Virus record (IMG/VR): IMGVR_UViG_3300044680_000280
Location: 342,735 to 406,734 of that record
Reading direction: 5' to 3' (one strand)
Length of the DNA: 64,000 bases
How positions within the stretch are numbered: the stretch's first letter is position 1; each line of letters starts with the position of its first letter. The notes beneath the pieces were generated by a model. It was not told where the DNA came from and ran no database searches. It saw only the letters and a list, made by a program, of their open reading frames with translations. This document shows positions 835 to 63,227 of this stretch, one piece after another. Position numbers and translations under genes: made by a program.

Positions 835-1422
835 TCAATATCCGCCACGAATGTGTTTCTGAAGGTCCAGGTCAAGAGCAATGCGAGTGAGGGCATCCGC
901 GTGGTGGAGAAACTCGTTTCTTCGGTCGAGCCTTCGCGCGGTTTCCTGATCCTCTTTATCAAAGTCATCGGCAACGTGCCGAGCCGCACTCCTCAGTTCT
1001 TCTGCTCGAGATCGAATGTATCGTACGACCGGATCTCCGAGACGAATCTCGATCTCTTCAGGTGATAGTCCCCCCGCGAGCATGGCAGCAATACGAGCTC
1101 GTCCATCGAGTCTGTTAAACGCCACACGAATGTTCGGGTGATCGGAGGCGAATCTCCGCATGTCTTGCACTTCGATACAAAAGCGCCAGCCTTTTTCCTC
1201 CTCATGGGTGGATGCCCGGGCACTCAGGTAGAAACCCAGGGCGGGCGGGAACACCGTTGGGTCGTCGGATGCGAGCACATTCACCGGGGTGTGCTCGTTG
1301 TTCGTGCTCAACAGAATGACACCCACGTGTATCGCCCCCATAAGGTCGAGTACGTTCGAGTACGTGGTGATGGTTTCTGGTTCGGGCATCGAGAGGTACT
1401 TCAGACACTCGCGGGTCAACAT
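835..1422 (-). CDS. hypothetical protein
   Basis: 195 aa; CGGTGTA motif 10 nt upstream of ATG. Confidence 0.75.
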   Translation of the reverse strand: MLTRECLKYLSMPEPETITTYSNVLDLMGAIHVGVILLSTNNEHTPVNVLASDDPTVFPPALGFYLSARASTHEEEKGWRFCIEVQDMRRFASDHPNIRVAFNRLDGRARIAAMLAGGLSPEEIEIRLGDPVVRYIRSRAEELRSAARHVADDFDKEDQETARRLDRRNEFLHHADALTRIALDLDLQKHIRGGY

Positions 1423-1633
1423 GCTCTGTTAATACACCGGGAGCCGTCGCTTCAGATGGTGTAAGAATGGGGTATGCGCATCATCGGGCGGATCGGATAC
1501 GCTGACCATCAAGATGCGAGAACCTCTCGGGGAGCTCTCGGACGAGCAGGTTGCGGCTCTTATGGCTCCGCGTACCGGTCAAGTGGGCGTTTCTGATTGA
1601 ACCTTGATCCCTTCCGTGCTCTATTGACCTCCC

Positions 1634-2002
1634 ATGAGCAGCACACCCATTGAGATACCCGTTGCCATTCGTAGGGTACGTTTCAATCCGTTACCCGGGG
1701 TATCTTTTCGCCTCACCATGTGGGAGACTCGCGAAAAGTCCCTCCTGGGGGGCAACACGATCAGTTACCGTCTCATGATGCACGTGACGGGGCATCCGGC
1801 CGTTGAGCTCTTCAATGGAACCCAGTTCTCCGTACTCAAACACACTACGGAGTCGGATGAGGCTCTGAGCCTTCTAATGTTTTACCTTGTGTTCGCGAAA
1901 GAGGCGAACCCCGCTACTGCGAAACATCACCAGGAATTCGTCGAAAAATACGCCGTCACCCTTTGGTCCGAGGTAGAGGACCGATTTGGAGGACTCCCGT
2001 GA
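1634..2002 (+). CDS. hypothetical phage protein
   Basis: TTGAAC-class motif upstream; first gene of an overlapping + strand run. Confidence 0.75.
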   Translation: MSSTPIEIPVAIRRVRFNPLPGVSFRLTMWETREKSLLGGNTISYRLMMHVTGHPAVELFNGTQFSVLKHTTESDEALSLLMFYLVFAKEANPATAKHHQEFVEKYAVTLWSEVEDRFGGLP

Positions 2003-2346
2003 TTGAGAGAGCTGTGGAACGAGTGCGTGTAGGGGCGGCCATTGGGACAGCGTACCTGTCCACCGGGGTTGCGTATCTGTCGTCCGGTCTGGCCAAGCTG
2101 GGGGTCGTTTCCCACGGGTACGCTTGCGGTAGGCACATGGACGCTATCGATGCCCACGAGCTGTGCCACGACTGGAATGGGACCACGCGGCACATCGAAC
2201 AGATGGCGCTGGAAGTCGAGCTTCAGAAGGCATGGGAACTCACCGAGGAGCTCCGCCTTCGGGAACGACGGTTCGGCCCCCTACCTGCTGACGAAGTCAA
2301 CCAGATGAAGGCTGAGTCCACCGTGCGGCTTTCGGGGTCCAAGTGA
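1999..2346 (+). CDS. hypothetical protein
   Basis: GTGA start/stop overlaps with both neighbours. Confidence 0.6.
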   Translation: MIERAVERVRVGAAIGTAYLSTGVAYLSSGLAKLGVVSHGYACGRHMDAIDAHELCHDWNGTTRHIEQMALEVELQKAWELTEELRLRERRFGPLPADEVNQMKAESTVRLSGSK

Positions 2347-2777
2347 GCGCGGCGCCCGGCTACTACGTGTCGGCTATAAGAGGAGAACTCGTTGCATTGC
2401 CCGCCGGACCGTTTGCAACTCATGCCGAGGCCATCGCATCCGTCGACAGTGTTCGAACGCGATGGGCGGATTTGGACCCGTCAACACACTTTGCGGCCTG
2501 GGGCACGTGCCGGGTTCGCGCGGATGGAGAGGCTGCTCCCGAGAAGCCGAAGCGCCGTGTGCGCCTGCCGCTGTTTGATCCGTTGCCGAGCAAAGGTCGA
2601 TTTCGCGTGTACGTGAACTCTATCGGCTCACTCTGTTGGCGCCCCGCTGGCGCCCCGATCCCCGATAACGGACGATGGGAAGAACTTGCACGCGTGAACA
2701 TGCCGCGTGGACGAGAAACCGACCTCAACGGCGTGTTTGCTGCATATGACGCGTTGCTTAGGGTGTACGCGTTATGA
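2343..2777 (+). CDS. hypothetical phage protein
   Basis: 144 aa, GTGA overlap; YYVS..GPF.TH.EA pattern. Confidence 0.7.
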   Translation: MSAAPGYYVSAIRGELVALPAGPFATHAEAIASVDSVRTRWADLDPSTHFAAWGTCRVRADGEAAPEKPKRRVRLPLFDPLPSKGRFRVYVNSIGSLCWRPAGAPIPDNGRWEELARVNMPRGRETDLNGVFAAYDALLRVYAL

Positions 2778-2837
2778 GTACGGATCTCTACTCTGGTGAG
2801 TGCAAGCATTCTTGTGCGTCAACCGGATAAGCATGGC

Positions 2838-2865
2838 TTGAACTTCTCGCTGGCCGGGCTGTACT
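2838..2865 (+). promoter_or_regulatory. class II promoter motif TTGAAC-N17/18-GTACT (representative copy; about 16 in window)
   Basis: recurs upstream of starts at 1634, 2888, 3435, 5060(-), 7264(-), 7787, 9446, 16873(-), 18351, 21930, 28968, 29777, 30259, 38487, 47372, 63299. Confidence 0.7.
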
Positions 2866-2887
2866 CCCCCCAAGGAAGAAAAAACGA

Positions 2888-3118
2888 ATGATTACATTTG
2901 CAGCCGTGATGTCGTGCGACCATCCTGAATGTGAAACGAAGGTTGAAGTTAAACTTTACCTCAGGATGAAGACTGGACGAGTCGGGTATGACGGAGGAGT
3001 GGGACGAGAAGTCCCAGAGCTGGGTTTTAATCACCCCTTAGGTTGGAGCGAGGAGCAGGACTGTTCCGGTCGGATGCGAAACTTTTGTAAGGAGCACGTC
3101 CAGGGGGAACGACGATGA
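2888..3118 (+). CDS. small Cys-containing hypothetical protein
   Basis: class II promoter and AAGGA upstream; CDHPEC...FCKEH. Confidence 0.7.
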   Translation: MITFAAVMSCDHPECETKVEVKLYLRMKTGRVGYDGGVGREVPELGFNHPLGWSEEQDCSGRMRNFCKEHVQGERR

Positions 3119-3396
3119 AGGCCGCCGACAAGATTTGGATCTACTACCAGTTTTTCACGAAGGAGCCCGCGTTCAAGGAGATCCTTCGTGATGATCCGAG
3201 GCTCGAATGGGACGCTCCGGGCACCCCTCCGGGCACAGTCCGTTACTCCCATCGAAAAGGGGGGAAGTGGACCTACGCCAACTTCGGCAACACCAAGCAG
3301 GAAGCCGCGGACAGCGCCAATCGTTACGATTTCGAAAAGATCGCGAAACTCGAAGCCGAGATCACTAGGATCAAGGCGAGACTCGTCAAGCCGTAA
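3115..3396 (+). CDS. hypothetical protein
   Basis: ATGA overlap with the previous gene. Confidence 0.7.
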   Translation: MKAADKIWIYYQFFTKEPAFKEILRDDPRLEWDAPGTPPGTVRYSHRKGGKWTYANFGNTKQEAADSANRYDFEKIAKLEAEITRIKARLVKP

Positions 3397-3434
3397 AGGT
3401 TGAACTTCCCTCACTCCAGCGCTGTACTACTCCC

Positions 3435-3991: not shown

Positions 3992-4007
3992 TAGTCGGAG
4001 TCGGAGT

Positions 4008-4014
4008 CGGTGTA
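4008..4014 (+). promoter_or_regulatory. class I promoter motif YGGTGTA, 9-11 nt before the start codon (representative copy; about 60 in window)
   Basis: CGGTGTA-ctgataaggc-ATG; same spacing before dozens of genes on both strands. Confidence 0.8.
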
Positions 4015-4024
4015 CTGATAAGGC

Positions 4025-4569: not shown

Positions 4570-4577
4570 ACCCATAC

Positions 4578-5060: not shown

Positions 5061-5144
5061 CGTTGTCTCCTTGGGAATGAGTACAACGCGACAAGTGGGA
5101 AGGTTCAAACCCCAAATGGAGTGAATCGGTGTATACGCCTATTC

Positions 5145-6505: not shown

Positions 6506-6527
6506 GCACCTATACGTACACCGATCC

Positions 6528-7612: not shown

Positions 7613-7786
7613 CGTCAGATTTACCTACACCGGATCTGGACTTACGGCCCGACGGGGGTTTCATCTTCCACTTGTCGATCGCGTTAGGGTATGATCCCCC
7701 TCGTGGCTCGCGTTGTGAGACGTGGTCGGAACTTTTAGGAACTGTTTTAAGTTGAACCCTAGGGGAGACCGCGCTGTACTCCCCCC

Positions 7787-8824: not shown

Positions 8825-8899
8825 GGAGAAAGGTTACACCAACGCCTGGGCGTTTTGGGATTCTTCGGCAATTTCTCCCAACGGTGTAATCTTTCTCCC

Positions 8900-9247
8900 A
8901 TGAGCACCCAATTGCAAATGAATGCTCGGTATGCCGAGACCCGCATCGAAAACGCGAAGGGTCAGACCATGGACGAGGTGGTCGAGGAGATGCGACAGAA
9001 GCACTGGGTGCCACTTCGCCGGGCTCTACTGCTGGAAGGTGTGACCCTAAGTCGCTACTGCGACTTTCTCAACGCTTGGCGAAAAGGGATCACGCGTTAC
9101 ATAACCCACGGTTGGCCGGAATTTTGCTACATTCGTCTGCAACCGGGGTCGATTTCGTCGCTGGCGCACCCGGATCAAGGTCGCGGGCTGACCGAGGTAG
9201 GGGTTGTAGACGAGGTTCATGCAGGAAATACAGCGAATGAGCTCTAG
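8900..9247 (+). CDS. hypothetical protein
   Basis: class I motif. Confidence 0.7.
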   Translation: MSTQLQMNARYAETRIENAKGQTMDEVVEEMRQKHWVPLRRALLLEGVTLSRYCDFLNAWRKGITRYITHGWPEFCYIRLQPGSISSLAHPDQGRGLTEVGVVDEVHAGNTANEL

Positions 9248-10599: not shown

Positions 10600-10679
10600 G
10601 CTCTAAGCGTTACACCGCCCGGAGCCCCGGGGACGAATCTTTTTCGATCTTCCGCTTCCCGTCGGTGTAATGCTAGAGC

Positions 10680-12907: not shown

Positions 12908-13564
12908 ATGACCGCGTACTTCGACAAGAAGGGCATCGACCTGGCGAACATGGAGAGGTCGCTGAAAAACGGCGTCCTCTCTCTGACAGCCTTCGGGACG
13001 CAGATCGACGAACTCGAGCAGGAACTCGTCTGGGATGTCACGATCGCAACAGAGTTCCCTGGGTTCCCGCCAGACCTAGCAACCGAGGTCAATGAGGCCA
13101 TCCTCAAACGTGGCACGGTGACTCAACCCCTCAACGCCTCTCGCCCGTCGTTCGAGACAGTGGAAGATCACGTGTACAACTTGTCGTCTCTTGTCGGAGA
13201 CTTCCACTCAATCTTCCACAAAGTCTCACAGCGCAAGATTGTCGGGTTCTCCGACGATCCTCGGAGCCCGCTCCGAGTCCTCTACGCGAAGTCCGAGGAA
13301 AAACGGGAAATGATGGTCGAGAGGAAAAACAGGGACGCCAAAATCAAGGAGCTTTACGTCCAACGCCGCCCCTTGACTCGAAAGAAGCGCCTCAAGGGTC
13401 ATTTGTCCGAAAAAGACGCTGCTGACCTCGCTCGAATTGAGAGAGAGATCAATGACCTACAGATGTTGGAGGCGGCGGCCCAACCTCCGTTCGCGAACGT
13501 TCTCATAGAGGCGCTGGAAGACTTGAACAAGACGATGGAGCTTCACTTTCGGGTCAAATCTTGA
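12908..13564 (+). CDS. hypothetical coiled-coil protein
   Basis: class I motif. Confidence 0.75.
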   Translation: MTAYFDKKGIDLANMERSLKNGVLSLTAFGTQIDELEQELVWDVTIATEFPGFPPDLATEVNEAILKRGTVTQPLNASRPSFETVEDHVYNLSSLVGDFHSIFHKVSQRKIVGFSDDPRSPLRVLYAKSEEKREMMVERKNRDAKIKELYVQRRPLTRKKRLKGHLSEKDAADLARIEREINDLQMLEAAAQPPFANVLIEALEDLNKTMELHFRVKS

Positions 13565-13610
13565 GTCGATTTTTTCTTGCATCCGGGTTCCGATGGTGTA
13601 TAACTTTGAT

Positions 13611-13748
13611 GTGCGCCTGGAGCCGGGACACTGATGGCCCGACTCAGCCGCAGTTACGTGAGTAAGGAGAGCCCTCGAGCCTAGTCCAACAGGGGGTGTT
13701 GTGGGGTCGGGTTAGCTACCCGAATGATTCGGATTCCCCAGTCCGCAC
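13611..13748 (+). ncRNA. candidate rod-shaped small RNA of unknown family
   Basis: TTGCAT-N16-TATAAC/GGTGTA promoter; 5'/3' ends pair (GUGCG/CGCAC, CUGG/CCAG, CCCGACUC/GGGUCGGG); terminator follows. Confidence 0.6.
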
Positions 13749-13789
13749 GGCCGCCGCCCTTGGATCCAGGACGGCGGCCGTTTCTTTTT
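13748..13789 (+). terminator. intrinsic terminator
   Basis: CGGCCGCCG...CGGCGGCCG stem followed by TTTCTTTTT. Confidence 0.8.
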
Positions 13790-13825
13790 GGTTCCTCTCA
13801 CGTCTCTTCGGTGTAGCTACTCAGA

Positions 13826-14356
13826 ATGCCCTCAGAGATCAGCAAGAAGTACACGCCCAAAACCACTCCGGAGAAACTGGGCTACCTCGTAGAGGAGTGT
13901 GGAGAAACCCTCGCGGCAGTGGGCAAAACTCTTCGGTGGGGGTTGGAGAGCTACAATCCCGAGCTCCCCGTCGCTGAGCGGGAAACAAACCGTGATTGGA
14001 TCCTGCGGGAGATTCACGACCTCGAGCGGGCGATCACCCTCGTCCGAGAGGCCCTTACAAAAGTCCGGGTCACCTACGACCACAAGAGTGACGTCCTCTA
14101 CGTGAAGAATACGGAGACGGACATCTACAGCAGTCAGGAGCTCCCGGACGACACCTTCGTCATTGTGAACCGAGACTACCACGGGAATCCCGTTGGTCTC
14201 CAAGTCCTCGAAGCGAGCAAGACGACCACGGCTTGGCACCTCTACGAGAAGGCTATTCCCAAATACTTGTTTGTCGCGGTCTCCGATTGGATCAGTCGGC
14301 TCGGTACTCGAGCCGAACTCATCGGTCATTTAGTACAAGGAGAGGAAAAGTCATGA
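13826..14356 (+). CDS. MazG-like NTP-pyrophosphatase domain fused to DUF2283-like domain
   Basis: LVEECGE..AVGK..RWG..REIHDL, then VTYDHKSDVLYV..GNPVGLQVL. Confidence 0.55.
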   Translation: MPSEISKKYTPKTTPEKLGYLVEECGETLAAVGKTLRWGLESYNPELPVAERETNRDWILREIHDLERAITLVREALTKVRVTYDHKSDVLYVKNTETDIYSSQELPDDTFVIVNRDYHGNPVGLQVLEASKTTTAWHLYEKAIPKYLFVAVSDWISRLGTRAELIGHLVQGEEKS

Positions 14357-16873: not shown

Positions 16874-17054
16874 GAGTCGAATACAACGCAGGTAGTCGAA
16901 AGGTTCAAGAGTACGTGGCTAGGAGATTTTGCACAGGAGCTTGTTGGCTCCGTACAAGCCAGAGTAGGTCTGTCTCGGCGTACCGAGCATTCGTTTGAAG
17001 TGTAAGGTCGATGCTTACACGAGCACTTCCCCGCCACACCCCGCGCAACGTTTG

Positions 17055-17360: not shown

Positions 17361-17417
17361 TCTACTACACCAAGATTCTCGATGAGTCAAGACCTCAGCC
17401 GGTGTAACCTGGGAACT

Positions 17418-18152
17418 ATGGGCAACCCGCAAGACCGCATCATTTTCGCTTTGGACCTTCCCACCTACAAGGAAGCCGCCGGTTACGTTTCCGCTCTGCG
17501 GGAACACGTCGGCTGCTTCAAGGTGGGGCTCGAGCTTTTTATGGTTGATGGCCCTTTAATGGTTCACCATATTCAACACGTACACAAAAGGTCGGTCATG
17601 CTCGACCTGAAGTTTCACGATATCCCTGAAACCGTTGCGCGAGCCCTCGTCCAGGCGGGGGATATGGGCGTGCGGTTCGCCACGATTCACGTGCAGCAAA
17701 GAGCAACGATGAAGAAGGCTGTCACGGTGGCAAAGCAGTACGGCATCCAACTCCTCGCCGTGACAGTTCTGACGTCGATGACGGACGATGACCTTTTCGA
17801 CCTGGATATGTCGCCGCCGTTCCTTGGTTTTTTCCCCGGTGGAGTATCGAACCGTGTCGAACGTCTGGCAAAGCTTGCCTGGTCGGAGGGTGTCACGGGC
17901 TTCGTTTGCTCTCCCATGGAGGTGAAGCGGCTCCGTAACAGTTTGCCCAATGCTGTCCTCGTGACCCCAGGAGTGCGTCCCGCGGGTAGTGATGTCGGAG
18001 ACCAAAAACGAATCGGGACGCCGTCTCAAGCTATTTCTGACGGAGCAAACTACATCGTCGTAGGTCGTCCGATTCGAGATGCCGCCGATCCTGTCGCCGC
18101 CGCGGCTCTGATCGCAAAAGAGATCGACTTCGACTTGGTGGACTCCCCTTGA
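17418..18152 (+). CDS. pyrF: orotidine-5'-phosphate decarboxylase
   Basis: IFALD, FKVGLELF, LDLKFHDIPETV, VTVLTS, VTPGVRP, DQKR, VVGRPI; class I motif sets the start. Confidence 0.96.
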   Translation: MGNPQDRIIFALDLPTYKEAAGYVSALREHVGCFKVGLELFMVDGPLMVHHIQHVHKRSVMLDLKFHDIPETVARALVQAGDMGVRFATIHVQQRATMKKAVTVAKQYGIQLLAVTVLTSMTDDDLFDLDMSPPFLGFFPGGVSNRVERLAKLAWSEGVTGFVCSPMEVKRLRNSLPNAVLVTPGVRPAGSDVGDQKRIGTPSQAISDGANYIVVGRPIRDAADPVAAAALIAKEIDFDLVDSP

Positions 18153-19828: not shown

Positions 19829-19893
19829 GCCTTTTTATTACACCGTTTTTTTACACTCGCCGCAGGTTTTTGGCTCGGTGTACGCTATTGGGT

Positions 19894-23004: not shown

Positions 23005-23213
23005 CCGTGTAGGCTTACGTGTGCCTAAATTCACCATCCAAGTCCGTCAGTCTCCCCTCATACCTGACATCCGGTGCAGGGGCTGCAACGTTCGGCCACC
23101 TCGAGACGTGACAGGATGGTTTATCGCAGCCGTCCATCTGATTCTCTGCCCCGATTGTCGTAAGAAACCGCTCAAACGTCATCATACGTAGCATTCTGGT
23201 GTACGGATAAAAC

Positions 23214-28899: not shown

Positions 28900-28967
28900 G
28901 GGTGATTCTTACACCAGGTTCCGCGAAGGATGGTTGAACTTTCGGGCGGGTGTGTTGTATCTATTCC

Positions 28968-35246: not shown

Positions 35247-35266
35247 GGCGGTGTAATGGGCGGGGC

Positions 35267-38237: not shown

Positions 38238-38445
38238 CATCCAACCTGGTCTCCTGGTGTGGTACTGGGCCACACCAAGAAGTTCCCCGCCGTGGTCGAC
38301 GGTCCGCTACGAAAGCGCGGCGAGTCCTACGTCGTTCGTCTGATCGATCTTCCACCCGAGTACGGGACTTACCGAGGTTGTCCGGGAAAGACCCACGTCA
38401 ATGACGCGGCCGTTCACTGTTTGGACCCTCGTTTGGACTTGAACC
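38224..38445 (+). pseudogene. frameshifted Tudor/SH3-like gene
   Basis: MLLSDIQPGLLVWY continues plausibly as GHTKKFPAVVDGP only after a frame change near 38265. Confidence 0.4.
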
Positions 38446-38486
38446 CGGTCTACTTCGAAGCTGTACTGCTACGCAAGGAGAGCTAC

Positions 38487-42043: not shown

Positions 42044-42063
42044 AGCCGCCCCCTTACACCTAT

Positions 42064-48920: not shown

Positions 48921-49505
48921 TTACACCGATTTTTGGGCCCTGTAGTGAGGGCATTCCTCGATCGCGTGTTTAAGTGGACATGCACAAGGTTCGCAAGGTC
49001 CAACGTGTGCATATCCCCCCGATAGATCGCAGTCATCGTCGATGCAAACTGAAACGAGGGGTTGGCTTCGCAGGGCAATGACGTCGGGGGTGCAGTAGGG
49101 ATCCGAAACCCTCTTGAGTGGCTTATCCGGGCCGGCAACAACGACAGAGAGGTAAGACTCCGTCCAATTCAAAGAAGCCATCTCGAAGTATCGAACGGCG
49201 TCCTCATACGATGAGAACTCCGTGACTTCGGGAACGCCCTCTCGAGCGACCGCGACAAGGTGAGTGGTCGGCTTTTTGATCATCCGGGTTGACTTTTTAT
49301 CTTGGTAGGTGCGTGGACAGTTTCTAGGAATCTTCTCCTGTCCGAGCTCCTTCATCGTCGGGGGAGTCCCCAGTTTGGTGCGGAATCCCCTTTCCTTGTC
49401 GTCCAAAATGATCCGTTTGTCACAGCACCGGCATCGCCAGGTTGTTCGCGTTTCGGAGCGAAATTCAACGCTCCAAAAATGCATTCGAATCAGTTCGGCG
49501 ACCAT
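48921..49505 (-). CDS. Cys-rich hypothetical protein
   Basis: 194 aa. Confidence 0.6.
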   Translation of the reverse strand: MVAELIRMHFWSVEFRSETRTTWRCRCCDKRIILDDKERGFRTKLGTPPTMKELGQEKIPRNCPRTYQDKKSTRMIKKPTTHLVAVAREGVPEVTEFSSYEDAVRYFEMASLNWTESYLSVVVAGPDKPLKRVSDPYCTPDVIALRSQPLVSVCIDDDCDLSGGYAHVGPCEPCACPLKHAIEECPHYRAQKSV

Positions 49506-51386: not shown

Positions 51387-52019
51387 TCACTTGTTGAGGA
51401 GGGGTCGAACGCTGACCCCGATCGATTTCACCGTTTGAATGAGGAGCATGGTGCTCTTGCGCCGGTCCTCGTCCAATTTCAGGGTGTCGGGGTTTCCGAT
51501 GACGCTGCTCAGAACCTCTGCGGTAGCCGTTGCCCGCGTGATTCGATCCGTGACCCTGGACAGGTCAGTGATGTGGTCCTCGCGAGTGGTGTACCCTTGA
51601 ATGGTACCCGCCTTGATGAGAAAGGAGTAATTGTACTTGCTGAGCATCAAGGATCGGGCTCGACCGACCTTTTTGATGAACTTGCAGACGTCGTCCGAAT
51701 CCGCGCTCTTGAGCGTCTTGCCGCCGTAGCACATCCAGTAGAGAACCGGACCAGGAATCGAAATGCCGGGGTACTCGTGCGTCAGCCAGTGGATGGCGTT
51801 GACGATCCGCTCCTTTTCGTCCAGCGAGATATCGATCAACTTCGCGTAGTGTTGCTGGATCGTCTTGGCGATCTTCGAGTCTGCGACGTTGTCAAGTGTG
51901 ACGACCTTGACCCCCGTCTTTTTGGACCTGGATTTGGACGCCGAGCCCCTTCCGCCCACTACGGTGTGAATGAGAGCAATGTCGGGGTCGTTCGTGCGTT
52001 TGTTGTCTTGAAGTGCCAT
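51387..52019 (-). CDS. hypothetical protein
   Basis: GGAG RBS; third gene of the 54149-51387 unit. Confidence 0.7.
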   Translation of the reverse strand: MALQDNKRTNDPDIALIHTVVGGRGSASKSRSKKTGVKVVTLDNVADSKIAKTIQQHYAKLIDISLDEKERIVNAIHWLTHEYPGISIPGPVLYWMCYGGKTLKSADSDDVCKFIKKVGRARSLMLSKYNYSFLIKAGTIQGYTTREDHITDLSRVTDRITRATATAEVLSSVIGNPDTLKLDEDRRKSTMLLIQTVKSIGVSVRPLLNK

Positions 52020-52036: not shown

Positions 52037-53101
52037 TTAACCGTTGGGATACGTTTCGTGGTAGGTCGTGACGATCGAATAGGCTTGAGAGTGCGGGTTG
52101 AAGATACTGGCGGATTCTGGGCTCGAGTTGATGTCTGGGTGGTGCAACTTGGCAACTTCTCGCCAGAGCTTCTTGACCTTTGACAAATCTCCCAGGGTTC
52201 CAGTGGGGGGCAGAGCGCCTGTTAGACGCTGATAGGCGTCCTCGTACTCAGAACGCTTCTCCGCATGAGAGGCGACTATTCCAGTACGTTGAGCCTCTTT
52301 CTCACGTTCGAGAAGGCGGACGCTCGTAACCCGAACATAGTCCAAGGCTTCCTGAAGAATGTTCTTAGCCGACGATTGCATTCGGAATCGGGCTTCATGG
52401 TTGAGCATCGTTTCGGTGTATCCCTCGATGTACCTTTCGAAGGAGGTTTGAATTTCCCGTACCAGAGCTTTTCGCGCTTCGACAGGGAAAGGCGAAACCT
52501 TTTCGTCTTTAGGAGGTTCTACACTAGCGGGGACCCTTTTCACTCGGACCTTCCCACCATTGCCCTTGCTCTTCGGAGGGGGCAGTTCGAAAGCTTCTCG
52601 AACCTTCTGGGGTACCCTTTTGGTCATTACACCGTTTAGCCCGCGCTTCCCGCTAGAATCGAACTCTTTGAACTTTTTAATGACGTCTTTGAACGCCTGT
52701 CGTAGGCTCATCCCACACTTTTCGTGCACCTCGATGGCGATGCGAAGCACCTTCTCGACGGGCTCCGCATGGACTTTCAGTGCGTCCATAAGCTCGAAGG
52801 ACAGGTCGGCGGTTTCAGGTTCCCGACCGAGTTTCAGAAGCTCGTAAAACGTGTGGACGGTGTAGTAGTACTCTCCCCGCTTGCCACGTCGATTCGGCAC
52901 AATCTGCTTGAAGAGCTCCAAGAGCTCTTTGGCTGATCCCGTGGGAGTGCGGCTACTTGAGCCCAAGAGGAGAAGTATCTCCTCCATGGCGTAGTACTTC
53001 TCCTTGGCGCCCAACGACTCTATCTTTGAGTCCAGGGCAAGGACGGCTTCAGACAGTTGCTTGGTCGATCGCGTCGCTGCTGCTTCCATCGTAGTTCTCA
53101 T
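52037..53101 (-). CDS. protein with C-terminal J-domain (DnaJ-like)
   Basis: VKKLWREVAKLHHPDIN..AYSIV with HPD motif. Confidence 0.75.
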   Translation of the reverse strand: MRTTMEAAATRSTKQLSEAVLALDSKIESLGAKEKYYAMEEILLLLGSSSRTPTGSAKELLELFKQIVPNRRGKRGEYYYTVHTFYELLKLGREPETADLSFELMDALKVHAEPVEKVLRIAIEVHEKCGMSLRQAFKDVIKKFKEFDSSGKRGLNGVMTKRVPQKVREAFELPPPKSKGNGGKVRVKRVPASVEPPKDEKVSPFPVEARKALVREIQTSFERYIEGYTETMLNHEARFRMQSSAKNILQEALDYVRVTSVRLLEREKEAQRTGIVASHAEKRSEYEDAYQRLTGALPPTGTLGDLSKVKKLWREVAKLHHPDINSSPESASIFNPHSQAYSIVTTYHETYPNG

Positions 53102-54149
53102 TGGTGGTCGTCTGATCCCCTGGCATATTTCGCATAAAACCGATCCGCTCTTTGGCACGAGCGATCAGGTAGCTGATGCCAGCCTGGGTCATGCCCAGTT
53201 TGGTTGCGATTTCTGCTTGAGTCATGTCGTCGAGTAGGTACATCCGCAGAGCGTCCGCCTCTCGGGGTGGTATACGCTTCAAATACTCCAGAAAGCTGCT
53301 GTCAAAGTCTGGGGAGACCGCCATGCATTCCAACGCCTTCTCGTAGTCCTCTGCCTTTCCGTCGCGACTCACTTGAGACAGAATGTCTTTTGCCCGTTGA
53401 GCCCCGAGTCCTCGGTCCAAGGCGTTCCACAGGGGCGCCGCTTCTTCCCCCCGTTTGAGAAGTCGGTCTCGAAGGGTAAAGTGGTATACGTCTCGGCAGT
53501 CCAAGTACTCCCCTAGCCAATCCATGGGGTTTCGGCCCGCAAAGTCCCGCTGTTCCTTCGTGGAAAGATTTGAGATCGATCGCTCCATGAGGGCCTTGTG
53601 CCTCCACGAAAGAGACGAACAGAACTCATTGTATTGTTCCACCAGGTCCTCGAACTTCACTTCTCTCGGCTTGTCACCCGAGAGGTGTTCGAGATGGGGA
53701 GACGTCGGTACCGGCACGAATTCAACGGTGGGCTCAGGCTCCTGTTCAGGTGGCGCTGGTTCAATAACTGGAGAAGGCTCTGGTTCGGACGGCGTTAACC
53801 CCAACATACGGATTAACTTCAAAGCCAAACTCGCCCCGTCCGGCTGTACAAGACGATTGATCAGAATGTTGAAGTTTGGGGAATCGACGCCCACGCTGTA
53901 ACGCGAAAGCTCATCCAGGATTTGAATACGCGTGCTTTGGAGTTCGTGGTACGCGGTAGCGAGGGCGACCAAATGTTCGGGCTCGCCCAATTTTGGAACG
54001 TGCGGTTCCTCTTTCGTCCCCTCGTGAACGTATCCGTCGACAAGGCCTTGAATTAAGGCGTCCACTCCCACCGAATAAGACTCGGCTTGCTTTTTCAACC
54101 ACTCCCACGCTGGAGCGGGAAGCAGAATCGATAGCGTGAGAGACTCCAT
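53049..54149 (-). CDS. regulator: N-terminal RHH-like domain plus C-terminal sigma70 region-4 HTH
   Basis: LSILLPAPAWEWLKKQA; IPPREADALRMYLLDDMTQAEIATKLGMTQAGISYLIARAKERI. Confidence 0.7.
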   Translation of the reverse strand: MESLTLSILLPAPAWEWLKKQAESYSVGVDALIQGLVDGYVHEGTKEEPHVPKLGEPEHLVALATAYHELQSTRIQILDELSRYSVGVDSPNFNILINRLVQPDGASLALKLIRMLGLTPSEPEPSPVIEPAPPEQEPEPTVEFVPVPTSPHLEHLSGDKPREVKFEDLVEQYNEFCSSLSWRHKALMERSISNLSTKEQRDFAGRNPMDWLGEYLDCRDVYHFTLRDRLLKRGEEAAPLWNALDRGLGAQRAKDILSQVSRDGKAEDYEKALECMAVSPDFDSSFLEYLKRIPPREADALRMYLLDDMTQAEIATKLGMTQAGISYLIARAKERIGFMRNMPGDQTTTNENYDGSSSDAIDQATV

Positions 54150-55331: not shown

Positions 55332-55398
55332 GTCTACCCATCTGTACACCGGGTTTTATCCCTTGAATAGAGCTGATCGCTGGTGTAAGGTCAAATTT

Positions 55399-56343
55399 AT
55401 GGACGCTGACATCGAAGGGGCGATCATTCGTTTGAAGCGCGAACGGAACGCTGTTCTCTTGGCTCACTACTACCAGGACAGTGAGATTCAGGATGTCGCG
55501 GATGTCATCGGCGATTCTCTTCAGCTTGCGCGAACGGCGGCGGAGACGACAGCGGACGTCATCTGCTTTGCCGGAGTTCACTTCATGGCGGAGACCGCAA
55601 AAATCTTGAACCCGACGAGAACGGTCATCCTACCCGACCTCAACGCTGGGTGCTCCCTCGCCAACGGGTGCCCCGCGGATCGATTCGCCCAATGGGTGGA
55701 TAACTGTAGGAAGCACGCTCCAAACAACGACGTGACGGTTGTCAGCTATATCAACTGTACGGCCGAGGTCAAGGCGCTCTCGGACATCATCTGCACGTCG
55801 TCCAACGCGGTGAGGGTCATCGAGAGCATCCCCGAGAGCAGCACGATTCTCTTCGCGCCCGACAAGAACCTTGGCATGTGGGTCCGCAAAAAGACCGGAC
55901 GACCTATGGTCTTTTGGCAGGGTACTTGCATCGTCCATGAAACATTCAGCCAGCGAAAGCTCATCGGACTCAAGACGCAGTATCCTGGAGCTCAGGTCAT
56001 CGCCCACCCCGAATGTGAACCCGCGGTTTTGGACATGGCCGACTTCGTGGGGTCAACGACGGCCCTTCTGAGCTATGCGGTCGCCAGCTCCTGGGACCAG
56101 TTCATCGTCGTCACCGAGTCTGGCATCCTGCACCAGATGCAGAAAGAGGCGCCAGAAAAGACGTTCATCCCCGCGCCTCCCGACGGCAACTGCGCCTGCA
56201 ACGAGTGCCCGTACATGAAAATGAACACACTCGAGAAGGTGTACGCCTGTCTCCGAGACTTGTCGCCTCGCATCGAGATGGACCCCGCCCTGCTTGCGCG
56301 GGCTCGGGTTCCGATCGATCGGATGATGGCAATCTCAGTCTAA
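55399..56343 (+). CDS. nadA: quinolinate synthase
   Basis: [67 protein letters not shown]. Confidence 0.97.
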
Positions 56344-57848: not shown

Positions 57849-57875
57849 AGCCTATTCCTACACCGGAGGCGCCCG

Positions 57876-58193: not shown

Positions 58194-58195
58194 GT

Positions 58196-59524: not shown

Positions 59525-59531
59525 GGTCCTA

Positions 59532-60259: not shown

Positions 60260-60305
60260 GGATTATTGTTACACCGGAAGTCTCGAATTCGGTGTAACCT
60301 AATGC

Positions 60306-60512: not shown

Positions 60513-61038
60513 CAGGGGTCGTCGTGAACTTGCACCCGCACGTGGACATCATGATGACCCCGGGCTTGAGCGGATGACCAACGTGCTCGTACTTTTGCTT
60601 ACACGTAGGGCAAGTGTCTAGCGGACGGTCCACGACCGTGACGTCTGGCCTCCTGGAGATTCCCTCGGTCGGACGGATGTCCTTGGCCATTCCGTCTAAT
60701 TGAGCCATGAGATCGGCTGGGAGGTAGCGGTACTCAAGGGGTATCCCGTTTTTCATATGAAGTTCGATCCCCATCTTCATGCCGCTTGAGATCCCCAGAT
60801 CTTCGTAGACAACAGCGGCCTCCCCACAGGCGCCCCAGATGAAACCGACCTGCATGCCGAGCTTTCGCTCCTCGGGCGACGCGTCATCGAGGAATTGAGT
60901 CATGAGGAGGTGACTCGCGTATGGGGCTTCTTTTCTTCGAAGGCAATCCACGGCACAAAGTCGAGCGTACTTGATGTTCTCCTCGAAGGTTCGGCCATTG
61001 GAAGGAGACAAGGGGGATTCAATGACGACTTTTCGCAT
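60499..61038 (-). CDS. nucleoside 2-deoxyribosyltransferase-fold protein (DUF4406/DUF7768-like)
   Basis: VVIESP..NIKYAR..EAPYASHLL.TQ.LDD..ER.LG..GISSGM..GI. Confidence 0.75.
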   Translation of the reverse strand: MRKVVIESPLSPSNGRTFEENIKYARLCAVDCLRRKEAPYASHLLMTQFLDDASPEERKLGMQVGFIWGACGEAAVVYEDLGISSGMKMGIELHMKNGIPLEYRYLPADLMAQLDGMAKDIRPTEGISRRPDVTVVDRPLDTCPTCKQKYEHVGHPLKPGVIMMSTCGCKFTTTPVTSP

Positions 61039-61090
61039 GGGAACCTCTTTCGAGGCTCCCCTACACCACGGACCGGTGTAAAGATGGGAA

Positions 61091-61510
61091 ATGGAACTCT
61101 CCTCTTCTGACCGCCGACTCTCCCTCTGGGAAAAGTACGGTCCGGGTACAGTAAAAAAGTTTCAACACATCCGTTCGGCCGAGACTCACGTCATCCTCAT
61201 GATCGACATTCGGTCTCCGGACGGCCCCGACATCATACGGTCTCTTTATACCATATCCGGAAGCAATACGGAGAGGCACGGTAAAGTCGAGGACAACGCG
61301 GAAGCGGAAATCGCTCGCCTGCAAAAGAGCGGGGAGCCGTTCATCATGGCTCTCGCGTTGGAACCCACGATCGCCATTTTCAAAAGCGTCAGGTCGAAGA
61401 TCGCCGAAGGACTCAGCGCCGAATTGACTCCGAACCATGTTCGAGCCGTCATTCTGGCAGAGAAGGGCGCTATCCTCGTTCAAGAACCCATCCGGGTCGG
61501 CACGAACTAG
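61091..61510 (+). CDS. hypothetical protein
   Basis: class I motif. Confidence 0.7.
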   Translation: MELSSSDRRLSLWEKYGPGTVKKFQHIRSAETHVILMIDIRSPDGPDIIRSLYTISGSNTERHGKVEDNAEAEIARLQKSGEPFIMALALEPTIAIFKSVRSKIAEGLSAELTPNHVRAVILAEKGAILVQEPIRVGTN

Positions 61511-61701
61511 AGGAGTTTTCCGGCCACGAGTCGCGGTTGGAAAATCGCCGCTCGAAAGGCCTCTCCTGGCGGGAGTTCGATGCGTCGGTACTCCCTTATA
61601 GGCCTCTTGTCCTCTCCAAATGTTCGTTTGATAAAGTCGGATTCGTCCTCTGCGGACACGACGAGAACCTCGTCCTCAGTGCAATATGCAACGACGCCCA
61701 T
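61507..61701 (-). CDS. small hypothetical protein
   Basis: GGAGG RBS. Confidence 0.5.
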   Translation of the reverse strand: MGVVAYCTEDEVLVVSAEDESDFIKRTFGEDKRPIREYRRIELPPGEAFRAAIFQPRLVAGKLL

Positions 61702-61758
61702 TCCTCCATCTTACCACTTTTCTTCTATCGGGGAAGGGTTCGGTGTAAAGAGGAGTCC

Positions 61759-62055
61759 ATGTCGAAACGCGCTGATGACCTTCTCATGCTCGAGGAAGTC
61801 CTGGATGATGACGAGCTGTCGGACGACGAACGAGAAATCTTCGAGAGTATGCTCGAGAGCCTCAATGAGACCACGACTCGCATTCTCTCGGAGAAACAAC
61901 GGAACATGCTTCTGAAGGTTCATGACCGATCCCACCCAGCGTACGCAAACCTGTACAGCTCGGGAAAGGTTCCGGAAGGAAATCCCGTTCCGACGCCGCC
62001 CGTTCTCCAGAACCTTCCCAAATTTCCCCCGGGACGGAAACCGAAATCGGTGTAG
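61759..62055 (+). CDS. hypothetical protein
   Basis: class I motif plus GAGGAG. Confidence 0.7.
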   Translation: MSKRADDLLMLEEVLDDDELSDDEREIFESMLESLNETTTRILSEKQRNMLLKVHDRSHPAYANLYSSGKVPEGNPVPTPPVLQNLPKFPPGRKPKSV

Positions 62056-62064
62056 ATAGAAACA

Positions 62065-62331
62065 ATGGCGACTCAAAGGCTGCTCACCGCCACAAAGCGT
62101 GAGGACACGACGCAAAGCTGGGAAGTCTTCCGCTTCGAGGGTCTCCGAAGAGATGTCATCGGCTGTGTATTCGCCTCGTCCGTGGAAGACGCACTTCGAA
62201 TCGCTCGTCGAAACTATCCCGATCACCGGGACTTGATCGTCAAACAGGACGAGGATCCCTATTTCTTGGGGGACGAGTCAATCACCAAAAATGAGGGAGA
62301 CTATGGACCAAGAACAGACCGAAGCAACTGA
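62065..62331 (+). CDS. hypothetical protein
   Basis: class I motif. Confidence 0.65.
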   Translation: MATQRLLTATKREDTTQSWEVFRFEGLRRDVIGCVFASSVEDALRIARRNYPDHRDLIVKQDEDPYFLGDESITKNEGDYGPRTDRSN

Positions 62332-62560
62332 AGCGGAATCGACTGAAGCCGTCTACGACACGAGGACCCACTTTGAGCGGCACCCGAACGATTCGCCAGC
62401 TCACTTAGGTATGATCCGAGTTCGTATCGACGGCGGGGACAGCACAACGAAGCGTGAGGACCGTCAGTACTTCTTCGTCAAAGCGGGATACGGAGAGAAG
62501 CAGAGAATCAAAGCTGCTCGGGCCTTCTTTGCATCAAAGATGGGACAAGACCTCGAGTAA
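62303..62560 (+). CDS. hypothetical protein
   Basis: GAGGGAG RBS. Confidence 0.6.
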   Translation: MDQEQTEATEAESTEAVYDTRTHFERHPNDSPAHLGMIRVRIDGGDSTTKREDRQYFFVKAGYGEKQRIKAARAFFASKMGQDLE

Positions 62561-62604
62561 GGATGAGCTGTTCAACGACTTTCTTTTTGTCGACCGTGTA
62601 GTCG

Positions 62605-62958
62605 ATGGCTTGGAAGTCGGATGAGAGAGAAGACTACGTCCAATCGCTCCTGACGGATGAGGTTCTCGAGGCCTACAACGAGGCGTCTGAGAAGTTCAAA
62701 ACGGGAGATCTCGTCATCCTATTCCGTGAGGAACAGATTTCGGTCTATCCGAGACAGAAGCTATTTGAGCATTTGAAGTCGGTTGAGGCTTCCATCCACC
62801 TCATTGACAAGCTCTCGGCGCCCGCCAGTGAGTCTTTGGTTCTCTTCCGAGGTTTGGGTATGCCCTCATTTTGGTTCGTCACAGACCTACCTAACTCGGA
62901 CGAGACGGTATGCTGCGCCATCGCAGCGGCGAGAACCCTGGGCGGGGGTCTATCCTAA
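62605..62958 (+). CDS. hypothetical protein
   Basis: 117 aa, operonic. Confidence 0.65.
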   Translation: MAWKSDEREDYVQSLLTDEVLEAYNEASEKFKTGDLVILFREEQISVYPRQKLFEHLKSVEASIHLIDKLSAPASESLVLFRGLGMPSFWFVTDLPNSDETVCCAIAAARTLGGGLS

Positions 62959-62978
62959 AATCGGTGTAATAACCGTTC

Positions 62979-63227
62979 ATGGCTAAGAAGTCGAAGCCTA
63001 AGAAGCTCAAGAAGGTCCCGAGGTCAACGAAAGAGTTCAGTGGGATCCGAGTCCAGCTCGATTTTACGATCTCGTTTGACTCGGATCAGAAGGTCAACTC
63101 TCTCCCCCACCTCGATGACGTCAACGATCTCATCTTGAACGGCATCGTGGCCAGCGCATTTTTTGCGGAAGGTAAAGAAGGCTACATCGAGCCGGGGGCC
63201 ATACTGAACATGCGACTCATAAAGTAG
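62979..63227 (+). CDS. hypothetical protein
   Basis: class I motif. Confidence 0.65.
   Translation: MAKKSKPKKLKKVPRSTKEFSGIRVQLDFTISFDSDQKVNSLPHLDDVNDLILNGIVASAFFAEGKEGYIEPGAILNMRLIK

What the first reader, a model, noticed from the sequence alone, without database searches (positions are those of the whole stretch)
1420..62980. About 60 copies of YGGTGTA 9-11 nt upstream of start codons: gene-by-gene promoter making leaderless mRNAs
Seen: by eye, about 30 copies per strand of (C/T)GGTGTA at a nearly fixed distance from ATG/GTG, e.g. before 4025, 5145, 8900, 10680, 13826, pyrF, 23214, 35267, nadA, 62979 (+) and 1422, 6505, 8824, 19828, 28899, 42043, 48909, 57848 (-). Most of these genes lack a Shine-Dalgarno, and no conserved -35 is visible. 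The same motif lies 10 nt before the 5' end of the structured RNA at 13611, which argues it fixes a transcription start and is not a ribosome site. Inference: a -10-only promoter (conceptually like T4 late promoters) read by a phage sigma/RNAP, with +1 at the start codon. Host-type genes (pyrF, nadA) have been brought under it.
Basis: partly seen in the sequence, partly recalled or inferred. Interest (0 to 1): 0.75.

Follow-up and report, generated by a model that had tools for sequence, protein, structure and literature searches.

The report
Invariant phage promoter making leaderless mRNAs
An exact six-letter signal, GGTGTA, sits 16-17 bases before the start codon of about 60 genes in this stretch of a roughly 400-kb phage genome (and in its relatives), and is most likely a phage-specific promoter that starts each mRNA at its start codon, so that these genes need no ribosome-binding site.

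Summary
YGGTGTA occurs 83 times in the window (8.3 expected); 62 copies (31 per strand) lie 16-17 nt before a start codon. The hexamer is all-or-none (58 exact against 4 one-mismatch copies at that distance). Everything testable without RNA data favours a promoter over a ribosome site. Motif genes lack Shine-Dalgarno sequences (11% against 40%) and use ATG (91%). The motif is concentrated at divergent gene starts. It also precedes ORF-free units (an sRNA-like unit, a tRNA-like gene, the tmRNA). When it lies further upstream, a normal Shine-Dalgarno fills the leader, starting at the predicted +1. The same hexamer at the same distance is found in 12 of 14 related huge phages with GC from 44 to 65%, but not in host-lineage (Polyangiales) DNA. 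In one AT-rich relative it sits in a full -35/17-bp/-10 frame. I also found a second, bipartite promoter class (TTGAAC-N17-TGTAYT-N6-ATG) that is likewise leaderless. No phage RNA polymerase was found. A clade-conserved, very divergent sigma-like protein is the best candidate reader. Transcription starts are unmapped because no RNA run was listed. It is a new variant of a known kind.

The parts
1420..62980 (.). Region holding 64 start-associated GGTGTA sites (31 on +, 33 on -; 62 preceded by C or T). The full coordinate list is in the full report.
4008..4014 (+). CGGTGTA, 17 nt before ATG 4025 (82-codon ORF)
5127..5133 (+). CGGTGTA, 18 nt before ATG 5145 (153 aa)
8882..8888 (+). CGGTGTA before ATG 8900; back to back with the site at 8835-8841 (-)
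8835..8841 (-). TGGTGTA before ATG 8824 (224 aa); partner of the divergent pair
10663..10669 (+). CGGTGTA before ATG 10680 (336 aa, no family)
10611..10617 (-). CGGTGTA before ATG 10599 (95 aa); the 80-bp divergent spacer holds only these two motifs
13594..13600 (+). TGGTGTA in front of an ORF-free unit
13611..13792 (+). ORF-free transcription unit (sRNA-like): predicted +1 at 13611; hairpin at about 13747-13781, then TTTCTTTTT
13809..13815 (+). CGGTGTA before ATG 13826 (DUF2283 protein, 176 aa)
17400..17406 (+). CGGTGTA before ATG 17418 of pyrF (OMP decarboxylase)
23197..23203 (+). TGGTGTA before ATG 23214 (AAA ATPase, 453 aa)
35249..35255 (+). CGGTGTA before ATG 35267 (phrog_14517, 283 aa), 3 nt after the stop of the preceding gene
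55381..55387 (+). TGGTGTA before ATG 55399 of nadA; TTGAAT lies 13 nt upstream, as in relative G010
55345..55351 (-). CGGTGTA before ATG 55331 (95 aa); divergent partner of the nadA site
62962..62968 (+). CGGTGTA before ATG 62979 (82 aa)
1433..1439 (-). CGGTGTA before ATG 1422 (195 aa); faces the site at 1457-1463 (+)
6517..6523 (-). CGGTGTA before ATG 6505 (256 aa)
19839..19845 (-). CGGTGTA before ATG 19828 (82 aa); faces 19876-19882 (+)
28910..28916 (-). TGGTGTA before ATG 28899 (157 aa); faces a class-2 promoter at 28934 (+)
42055..42060 (-). GGTGTA preceded by A (the one start-associated site with A in place of the usual C/T) before ATG 42043 (DNA methyltransferase-like, 271 aa)
48922..48928 (-). 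CGGTGTA, 19 nt before ATG 48909 (146 aa)
57859..57865 (-). CGGTGTA before ATG 57848 (115 aa)
7752..7780 (+). Class-2 promoter (TTGAAC, 17-bp spacer, TGTACT), then 6 nt and ATG 7787: leaderless form
38439..38467 (+). Class-2 promoter followed by 7 pyrimidine-rich nt and a leader that begins AAGGAG: leadered form
53049..54149 (-). Gene of a 366-aa sigma-like protein (Sigma70 region 4 certain, the rest suggestive), unique to this phage; candidate reader of class 2

Best explanation
GGTGTA is the core of a phage-specific promoter. In a sigma-70-like frame its TA occupies -12/-11 and GGTG occupies -16 to -13, where an extended -10 element lies. Transcription then starts 16-17 nt after the first G, on the A of the ATG (or at most 2-5 nt before it). 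The result is mostly monocistronic leaderless mRNAs that ribosomes must initiate on without a Shine-Dalgarno. The enzyme is most likely the host core RNA polymerase carrying a phage-encoded sigma-like factor. The best candidate is a divergent sigma-like protein conserved in the clade (G000 251198-252322, minus strand, outside the window). Shown here: the motif, its invariance, its geometry, its gene context and its conservation.
For: (1) Position lock and invariance. 160 of 258 genomic copies are start-associated, against 8-19% for control words. There are 58 exact against 4 one-mismatch copies at 16/17 nt. Start-associated copies are preceded by C/T in 62 of 64 cases; the others are unbiased. 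(2) It is not a ribosome site. Shine-Dalgarno frequency is 11% against 40%, and ATG is used in 108 of 119 motif genes. The other genes of the same genomes use canonical AGGAG starting 11-12 nt upstream. GGTG ends 12 nt from the ATG, and the invariant TA cannot pair with the 16S tail (established anti-SD sequence). (3) Transcription-unit logic. The motif heads 50 of 108 genes with a divergent neighbour, but only 17 of 127 genes that follow a co-directional gene within 10 nt (p 2e-8). Divergent spacers of 17-80 bp hold two facing motifs and nothing else conserved. Sigma-70 consensus sites are not above chance. (4) Non-coding targets. These are the ORF-free unit at 13611-13792 with a terminator-like end, an intron-bearing tRNA-Thr-like gene starting 2 nt after the predicted +1, and the tmRNA 35 nt after it. 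(5) Leadered variants. When the motif is 23 nt or more from the start, 14 of 24 leaders hold a Shine-Dalgarno; at 28-29 nt it begins exactly 16 nt after the first G in 3 of 4 cases. (6) Comparative evidence. YGGTGTA-N10-11-ATG is enriched in 12 of 14 portal relatives (for example 77 against 2, and 59 against 3) across GC 44-65%. It is kept at 7 of 13 orthologs of motif genes against 2 of 83 others (p 5e-6). It is at background in 366 kb of host-lineage loci. In G010, 22 of 53 sites have TTGAA(T/C) exactly 13 nt upstream, which gives a 17-bp spacer to the TA, plus an A-tract. In G006 the hexamer continues as TARTAT. (7) A pyrimidine at -1 and A at +1, an A/T-rich -10 to -5 region, and a second promoter class with canonical geometry that also places +1 on the ATG. 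(8) Reader. There is no polymerase gene. All five orthologs of a conserved protein hit Pfam Sigma70_r2 below threshold at the same model segment (best E 7e-4). The only PDB profile hit is a sigma factor, and the C-terminus looks like a sigma 4.2 helix-turn-helix.
Against: No 5' end has been mapped; no RNA run was listed for this DNA. The exact start is ambiguous. A second conserved TA(G) lies 4 nt after the hexamer and moves with the motif, not with the ATG. If the shared TGTA is read as in class 2, +1 would fall 2-3 nt before the ATG. The T-14/G-13 of GGTG is shifted by one from the canonical extended -10 TG. The sigma-like candidate scores below Pfam's threshold, and a divergent homolog also exists in G008, which lacks the motif. 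The record is about 85% complete, so a reader could lie in the missing part. 21 window copies are not next to a start, of which about 8 are expected by chance.
Confidence: 0.78

Rival explanations
1. The motif acts in RNA. It would be an unconventional ribosome-binding or translation-enhancer sequence, the operator of a translational repressor, or a processing site that trims longer transcripts just before the start codon.
For: Strand-specific and at a fixed distance from the start codon. GGTG is part of the extended Shine-Dalgarno complement. Motif genes have no other ribosome site.
Against: It needs promoters upstream of every motif, yet divergent spacers of 17-50 bp hold nothing else, and sigma-70-like sites are at or below chance. 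The motif precedes untranslated units: an sRNA-like unit, a tRNA-like gene and the tmRNA. It is enriched at transcription-unit starts, not inside operons. The 12-nt gap from GGTG to the ATG and the invariant TA do not fit anti-SD pairing. Leadered copies carry a separate canonical Shine-Dalgarno. In G010 it sits in a -35/-10 frame.
Confidence: 0.07
2. The motif is a DNA operator for a phage repressor or activator that overlaps otherwise heterogeneous promoters. This would resemble the oriented stoperators or start-associated sequences of mycobacteriophages (my recollection of that literature).
For: An exact, non-degenerate hexamer is more typical of a DNA-binding regulator than of a -10 element. 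A conserved 212-aa protein with two helix-turn-helix domains exists in every relative.
Against: No other promoter-like signal is found around the sites. The spacing to the start codon is within +/-1 nt, which an operator does not require. T and A at -12/-11 with an A/T-rich stretch after them, and a 17-bp spacer from TTGAAT in G010, are features of a -10 element. The two-HTH protein is also present in G008, which lacks the motif.
Confidence: 0.07
3. It is a promoter, but it is read by an unmodified host holoenzyme (housekeeping or alternative sigma) and not by a phage factor.
For: No phage RNA polymerase was found. The geometry is sigma-70-like, TTGAAT resembles TTGACA, and there is an A/T patch where an UP element would lie. 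If these are early genes, no phage protein is yet available.
Against: The hexamer is identical in phages with GC from 44 to 65%, which presumably infect different hosts. It is at background in 80 Polyangiales and other cellular loci, with no ATG at the locked distance. Host -10 elements are degenerate, and this one is not. Sigma-like genes are conserved in the clade.
Confidence: 0.1

Closest known systems
T4 late promoters (TATAAATA read by gp55 with gp33 and the sliding clamp); established knowledge
   Same: A single, nearly invariant short element in the -10 region, no -35, many copies, read by host core polymerase with a very divergent phage sigma-like protein.
   Different: A different sequence. 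It serves small accessory genes and not the structural block. T4 late mRNAs have leaders with Shine-Dalgarno sequences. No gp55 homolog was identified here.
Middle/late promoters of Thermus phage P23-45 (extended -10 class; PMC7403470 citing Berdygulova 2011; that many of their transcripts are leaderless is my recollection, as the paper was not held)
   Same: Phage promoters that dispense with the -35 and rely on an extension of the -10 element, with starts at the start codon.
   Different: There the host sigma A reads a TG-type extended -10 after phage proteins block region 4. Here the extension is GGTG shifted by one base, the hexamer is invariant, and it is conserved across phages of very different GC content.
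Leaderless transcriptomes of Actinobacteria and Deinococcus-Thermus (PMC3160421; Cortes 2013 and Shell 2015 as cited)
   Same: A -10 signal (TANNNT) at a fixed short distance before the start codon, with no Shine-Dalgarno.
   Different: Those are degenerate host promoters. This is a phage-private exact word, and the presumed host lineage does not show it. The jumbo phages mapped so far, phiKZ and AR9, have no leaderless transcripts.
ECF-type sigma promoters (-35 GAAC, 16-17 bp spacer, -10 CGT/TGT; established knowledge), for the second class found here
   Same: TTGAAC, 17-bp spacer, (C/T)(C/T/G)GTAYT, with little degeneracy.
   Different: +1 falls on the ATG in 14-15 of 30 copies. The class is private to this one phage. 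No ECF sigma with a recognisable region 2 is encoded next to it.
Oriented repeated motifs of mycobacteriophages (Cluster A stoperators, Cluster K start-associated sequences); my recollection
   Same: Dozens of copies of an asymmetric short motif, oriented with transcription, near gene starts.
   Different: Those are repressor sites or include the ribosome site, and their distance to the start codon varies. Here the distance is locked and the Shine-Dalgarno is absent.

Membership tests
Sigma-70-family promoter, extended -10 class | T at -12 and A at -11 at a fixed distance (6-8 nt after the hexamer) from the transcription start | tested here: inconclusive
   T and A are invariant, and the A of the ATG lies 11-12 nt after that A, with a pyrimidine at -1. 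The start itself is unmapped.
Sigma-70-family promoter, extended -10 class | TG at -15/-14, one base before the hexamer | tested here: not met
   The TG of GGTG abuts the TA (positions -14/-13); GG precedes it.
Sigma-70-family promoter, extended -10 class | Where a -35 exists, it lies 17 +/- 1 bp from the -10 hexamer | tested here: met
   In G010, 22 of 53 sites have TTGAA(T/C)-N13-GGTG-TA, which gives a 17-bp spacer. The window nadA site has the same layout. Most window sites have no -35.
Leaderless mRNA | No Shine-Dalgarno, and a strong preference for AUG as start codon | tested here: met
   Shine-Dalgarno in 11% against 40%; ATG in 108 of 119 genes (p values).
Leaderless mRNA | Primary 5' end at (or within a few nt of) the start codon | not testable with these tools
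   No RNA run was listed for this DNA.
Shine-Dalgarno ribosome-binding site | Complementarity to the 3' tail of 16S rRNA, 5-10 nt before the start codon | tested here: not met
   Only GGTG could pair, it ends 12 nt before the ATG, and the invariant TA cannot pair. True AGGAG sites in the same genomes start 11-12 nt upstream.
T4-type late promoter system | TATAAATA at -13 to -6, serving late (structural) genes | tested here: not met
   A different word; only 6 of 114 genes in the structural block (60-200 kb) carry it.
Promoters of phage-encoded RNA polymerases (phiKZ/AR9 multisubunit, T7-like single-subunit) | The genome encodes the polymerase | tested here: not met
   There is no hit to PF00562 or PF00623 in the record. 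The one DxDGD motif in six frames lies in a 1450-aa ORF with no PHROG or PDB match. PF00623 is absent from five complete relatives. PF00940 had no hit, but its control rang nowhere, so that test is inconclusive.
Sigma-70 family protein (candidate reader, G000 251198-252322) | Region 2 (core binding and -10 recognition) and region 4 | tested here: inconclusive
   All five orthologs hit Sigma70_r2 at model positions 2-38, below the cut-off (best E 7e-4, 19.7 bits against 24). The PDB profile search returns only S. aureus sigma B, at E 2.3. The C-terminal helix-turn-helix aligns to region 4.2.
ECF-type promoter (class 2) | -35 containing GAAC, 16-17 bp spacer, short conserved -10, little degeneracy | tested here: met
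30 copies of TTGAAC-N15/16-Y(C/T/G)GTAYT; C-rich N6, then A (0.70) at position 7.

The most novel reading that the evidence does not exclude
A whole clade of 300-530-kb phages carries its own, barely recognisable sigma factor (region 2 split by an insertion of about 130 residues). This factor reads an invariant GGTGTA element, whatever the host or the genome's GC content. With it the phages have put a third or more of their genes, including captured host genes, under one-gene leaderless transcription units. Expression of the accessory genome would then bypass both host promoter recognition and Shine-Dalgarno-dependent initiation.
Probability: 0.35. Interest if true: 0.8.

Novelty: new variant of a known kind. 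Interest (0 to 1): 0.62.

Why it matters
If the reading is right, one exact hexamer marks true start codons and transcription units for hundreds of small genes of unknown function in an uncultivated clade of huge phages. That immediately improves annotation and separates expression classes. It would be the first jumbo-phage lineage with large-scale leaderless expression; phiKZ and AR9 transcripts all have leaders. It gives a compact, orthogonal promoter plus a candidate sigma pair to test. It also raises the question of how leaderless initiation is favoured in infected cells of a host lineage (probably Polyangiales) that shows no such signal. The lineage-private second class suggests that these phages swap promoter/sigma modules.

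Tried and rejected
RNA evidence: two searches for sequencing runs found three peat DNA runs and no RNA run. Read laying was therefore not used, since DNA reads say nothing about 5' ends.

Rfam: nothing in the window at gathering scores. Only terminator-like fragments matched at 13560-13830.

Phage collection: no close relative.

Sigma and polymerase search: PF04542, PF00562, PF00940 and PF00623 found nothing in the record. Large unknown proteins at 46-57 kb have no PDB sequence match.

The 366-aa region-4 protein: there are no full-length homologs in 5.8 and 1.8 billion proteins. The AF2 model has pLDDT 67, and Foldseek lists only sigma factors, none of them significant.

The 212-aa two-HTH protein: the model is good (pLDDT 88), but only its first domain matches sigma region 4.

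An apparent alternative motif in G008 (ACAGGGACC) turned out to be a palindromic repeat that contains an ATG, not a start-linked signal.

Proteins shared by four motif-bearing genomes but absent from G008: seven were found, the unknown ones without leads.

Host-type TTGACN/TANNNT promoters placed for leaderless starts: only 3 in the genome.

The literature search for the word GGTGTA was uninformative. The P23-45 paper was not held.

Full report
WHAT THE SEQUENCE IS. The window is the last 64 kb of a 406,734-bp IMG/VR virus record with GC 55%. The record carries 38 tRNA genes and a tmRNA. It also encodes a tail sheath, portal, family-A DNA polymerase, RecD-like helicase, ribonucleotide reductase, NAD ligase and GroEL. 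It is therefore a contractile-tailed huge phage, from peat. IMG/VR labels it 'provirus', about 85% complete. The window is nevertheless phage DNA and not a host flank. GC is flat, the genes are small and mostly unknown, and the motif studied here is shared with the 200-342 kb part and with relatives that have terminal repeats. NadA in the window is 73% identical to NadA of Polyangiales (Myxococcota) MAGs, one of them from a peat bog. That is a hint to the host lineage and nothing more.

THE OBSERVATION. YGGTGTA occurs 83 times in the window against 8.3 expected. Genome-wide there are 258 copies, concentrated between 200 and 406 kb. In the window, 62 copies (31 per strand) are followed by a start codon that opens an ORF of at least 30 codons, at offset 17 or 18 from the Y in 49 of them; 54 of the 62 starts are ATG. 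Control heptamers of the same composition are start-associated in 8-19% of copies, against 62% for the real word.

The word is all-or-none. At 16/17 nt before my independently scored starts there are 58 exact copies and 4 one-mismatch copies, and 4 is background. Start-associated copies are preceded by C or T in 62 of 64 cases. The 35 other GGTGTA copies in the window have no such bias.

Start-associated sites, given as the first G and then the start codon.
- Plus strand: 1458>1474, 4009>4025, 5128>5145, 8351>8371 (doubtful), 8883>8900, 10664>10680, 12893>12908, 13810>13826, 15584>15600, 16323>16341, 17401>17418, 19877>19894, 20703>20718, 22121>22137, 22716>22732, 23198>23214, 25041>25057, 31646>31663, 33766>33781, 34810>34827, 35250>35267, 36518>36534, 37221>37238, 37882>37899, 39819>39835, 55382>55399, 60291>60306, 61075>61091, 61742>61759, 62049>62065, 62963>62979.
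- Minus strand: 1438>1422, 6522>6505, 6939>6923, 6993>6973 (doubtful), 7631>7612, 8840>8824, 10616>10599, 16312>16296, 17371>17351, 19844>19828, 21886>21869, 27373>27356, 28915>28899, 30752>30737, 31154>31138, 34594>34577, 39153>39136, 41234>41217, 42060>42043, 43239>43224, 43581>43564, 45028>45012, 45288>45269, 46792>46776, 48475>48459, 48927>48909, 50612>50596, 51343>51327, 55350>55331, 56875>56859, 57864>57848, 58644>58627, 60275>60259.

PROMOTER OR RIBOSOME SITE. With a crude self-trained gene caller I called 474 genes, covering 84% of the genome.

- Start context. 119 genes have the hexamer 14-19 nt before a start. 11% of these have GGAG/GAGG/AGGA in the usual place against 40% of the rest, and 108 of the 119 start with ATG.
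- Canonical ribosome sites elsewhere. The remaining genes, and those of relative G006, use canonical AGGAG beginning 11-12 nt upstream. The ribosomes concerned therefore read an ordinary Shine-Dalgarno, and GGTGTA differs from it in both sequence and place.
- Gene context. The motif heads 46% of genes whose upstream neighbour is divergent, but 13% of genes that follow a co-directional gene within 10 nt; there a Shine-Dalgarno alone is commonest (p 2e-8).
- Divergent pairs. Many pairs are separated by 17-80 bp that contain two facing copies and nothing else conserved. Examples are starts 16296/16341, 10599/10680 and 55331/55399, and 230037/230054 in the genome, where each motif abuts the other gene's ATG. 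Sigma-70 consensus promoters are at or below chance (4 against 7.0, and 4 against 6.5).
- Untranslated targets. The motif precedes the 180-nt ORF-free unit at 13611-13792, which ends in a strong hairpin followed by TTTCTTTTT. It precedes an intron-bearing tRNA-Thr-like gene whose first base is 2 nt after the predicted +1 (G000 270437, minus strand). It also precedes the tmRNA, 35 nt after the predicted +1.
- Leadered copies. When the motif lies 23 nt or more before a gene, 14 of 24 leaders hold a Shine-Dalgarno. In three of the four cases at 28-29 nt the purine-rich Shine-Dalgarno begins exactly 16 nt after the first G, where the A of the ATG sits in the leaderless form.

RELATIVES. The portal protein finds 51 related IMG/VR contigs at 42-79% identity, many of them 300-530 kb. 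YGGTGTA-N10-11-ATG is enriched in 12 of 14 large records: 77 against 2 for the reversed control, then 59/3, 39/1, 37/0, 33/2, 31/2, 29/1, 28/6, 25/3, 22/1, 17/4 and 11/1. It is not enriched in G008 (complete by terminal repeats) or in the fragment G014.

I fetched five records whole. Start-associated copies number 105 (GC 65%), 126 (59%), 65 (48%) and 53 (44%), against 5 in G008. Between this phage and G006 (proteins about 45% identical), the motif is kept at 7 of 13 orthologs of motif genes and occurs at 2 of 83 orthologs of other genes (p 5e-6). In 366 kb from 80 cellular genomes around nadA, the word is at background and never has an ATG at the locked distance. A word that stays exact while GC moves from 44 to 65%, and that the presumed host lineage lacks, points to a reader encoded by the phages.

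GEOMETRY. In the window the flanks carry little information:
- C/T before the hexamer;
- an A/T-rich, C-poor stretch after it;
- TA(G) 4 nt after it, which moves with the motif;
- G-rich -4 to -2;
- C/T at -1 and A at +1;
- a weak A/T patch 24-26 nt before the first G.

In G006 the hexamer continues as TA(A/G)TAT. In G010, 22 of 53 sites read A-tract, TTGAA(T/C), 13 nt, GGTGTA, GTAATAG, 2 nt, ATG. That places TTGAAT 17 bp from the TA, the canonical spacer. The TA is then the start of the -10 hexamer, GGTG occupies -16 to -13, and the ATG lies 6-7 nt after the hexamer. The window's nadA site has the same TTGAAT-N13 layout. This is my main reason for placing +1 on the A of the ATG. The observed spread of 15-18 nt fits the known latitude of start-site choice with a pyrimidine-purine preference (established knowledge). 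A start 2-5 nt earlier, at the TAG or the G run, is not excluded.

A SECOND CLASS. Among genes without the hexamer, TTGAAC at -35 and TGTACT at -12 stood out. TTGAAC-N15/16-Y(C/T/G)GTAYT occurs 30 times, all between 270 and 406 kb and 16 of them in the window.
- Followed by 6 nt and ATG: 3400+, 7299-, 7752+, 9255-, 16908-, 28934+, 29742+, 44102-, 47338+.
- Followed by a short leader: 2838+, 5108-, 18300+, 21889+, 30210+, 38439+, 63231+.

The six bases after the hexamer are pyrimidine-rich. Position 7 is A in 70% of copies, whether ATG or AAGGAG follows, which is the signature of a start site. This class has textbook -35/17 bp/-10 geometry and an ECF-like look. It shows independently that this phage places promoters so that +1 is the start codon. 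It is absent from all 14 relatives.

WHO READS THEM. No RNA polymerase subunit was found in the record or in five complete relatives. I found three sigma-related proteins.

(a) Window 53049-54149 (minus), 366 aa. Sigma region 4 is certain. The rest is only suggestive of a sigma: a partial homolog carries regions 3 and 4, and Foldseek lists only sigma factors, none significant. The protein is unique to this phage, as is class 2. This co-occurrence is my only argument for pairing them.

(b) G000 187892-188530, 212 aa. It has a sigma-4-like domain plus a second helix-turn-helix, and is present in all 14 relatives including motif-less G008.

(c) G000 251198-252322 (minus), 374 aa. Orthologs exist in G005, G006, G010 and G012 at 27-29% identity. 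All five hit Pfam Sigma70_r2 at the same model segment, below threshold (best E 7e-4). A block resembling regions 2.3-2.4 follows an insertion of about 130 residues (my reading of the alignment). The C-terminus aligns to the region 4.2 helix-turn-helix of the only PDB hit, S. aureus sigma B (E 2.3). G008 has a more divergent homolog with an N-terminal extension. Protein (c) is my candidate reader of GGTGTA. That is an inference from co-conservation only.

WHAT REMAINS OPEN. On temporal class, the motif serves the small-gene regions and avoids the structural block, with 6 of 114 genes there.

COMPARISON AND VERDICT. In concept this is closest to T4 late promoters and to the extended -10 promoters of Thermus phage P23-45 (PMC7403470), and in output to the leaderless genes of Actinobacteria and Deinococcus (PMC3160421). 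It is a member of none of these. The word differs, the TG is shifted, the gene class differs, and the mapped jumbo phages phiKZ and AR9 have no leaderless transcripts. I rate it a new variant of a known kind. My confidence is 0.78 that it is a promoter giving leaderless or nearly leaderless mRNAs, and interest is 0.62.

Noticed in passing
window 2838, 3400, 5108, 7299, 7752, 9255, 16908, 18300, 21889, 28934, 29742, 30210, 38439, 44102, 47338, 63231 (first T of TTGAAC); 14 more at G000 270-342 kb: A second promoter class, TTGAAC / 17-bp spacer / TGTAYT, is followed either by 6 nt and ATG or by a short leader that begins with a Shine-Dalgarno. It is private to this phage, with 0-2 chance hits in each of 14 relatives.
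   Followed up: yes
window 53049-54149 (-), with co-directional genes 52037-53014 and 51387-52019: A three-gene block with high coding score. Its first gene encodes a 366-aa sigma-like protein with no full-length homolog anywhere. Upstream of it lies TTGACC-N17-ACGAAT-N6-ATG, a host-like and also leaderless-looking arrangement.
   Followed up: partly
G000 251198-252322 (-), outside the window (L098:11198-12322): A clade-conserved protein with a weak Sigma70 region 2 signature, a large insertion and a region-4.2-like C-terminus. It appears to be a very divergent sigma factor.
   Followed up: partly
G000 about 270300-270420 (-), outside the window: A tRNA-Thr(AGT)-like gene with a 34-nt insert in the anticodon loop, missed by the default ARAGORN run. 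It starts 2 nt after the +1 predicted from a GGTGTA site and is followed by a T run.
   Followed up: partly
leaders after GGTGTA, e.g. G000 306938, 310498, 51130, 9270, 262238: Leaders longer than about 20 nt often contain AACCCC or ACCCC. Discriminators of class 2 are also C-rich. No explanation.
   Followed up: no
window 8925-8938 (-) and 16974-16987 (+): Two nearly identical 24-nt stretches: a 5-bp-stem hairpin CTCGGC(A/G)TACCGAG followed by CATTC(A/G)TTTG, at unrelated places.
   Followed up: no
window 55399-56343 (nadA) and 17418-18152 (pyrF): Host-type metabolic genes. NadA is 73% identical to Polyangiales MAGs, including one from a peat bog, which hints at a myxobacterial host whose GC (62-70%) is well above the phage's 55%.
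   Followed up: partly
relative G008 (L181-L196), e.g. 8602 and 10704: A repeated palindromic element, ACAGGGACC..GGTCCCTG followed by ATGATTTCAACC. This complete 301-kb relative has neither GGTGTA nor any other start-locked word.
   Followed up: partly
whole record: A 463,523-bp contig holding the identical sigma-like protein is on record, so a longer assembly of this phage exists. The IMG/VR record ends at the window's end.
   Followed up: no
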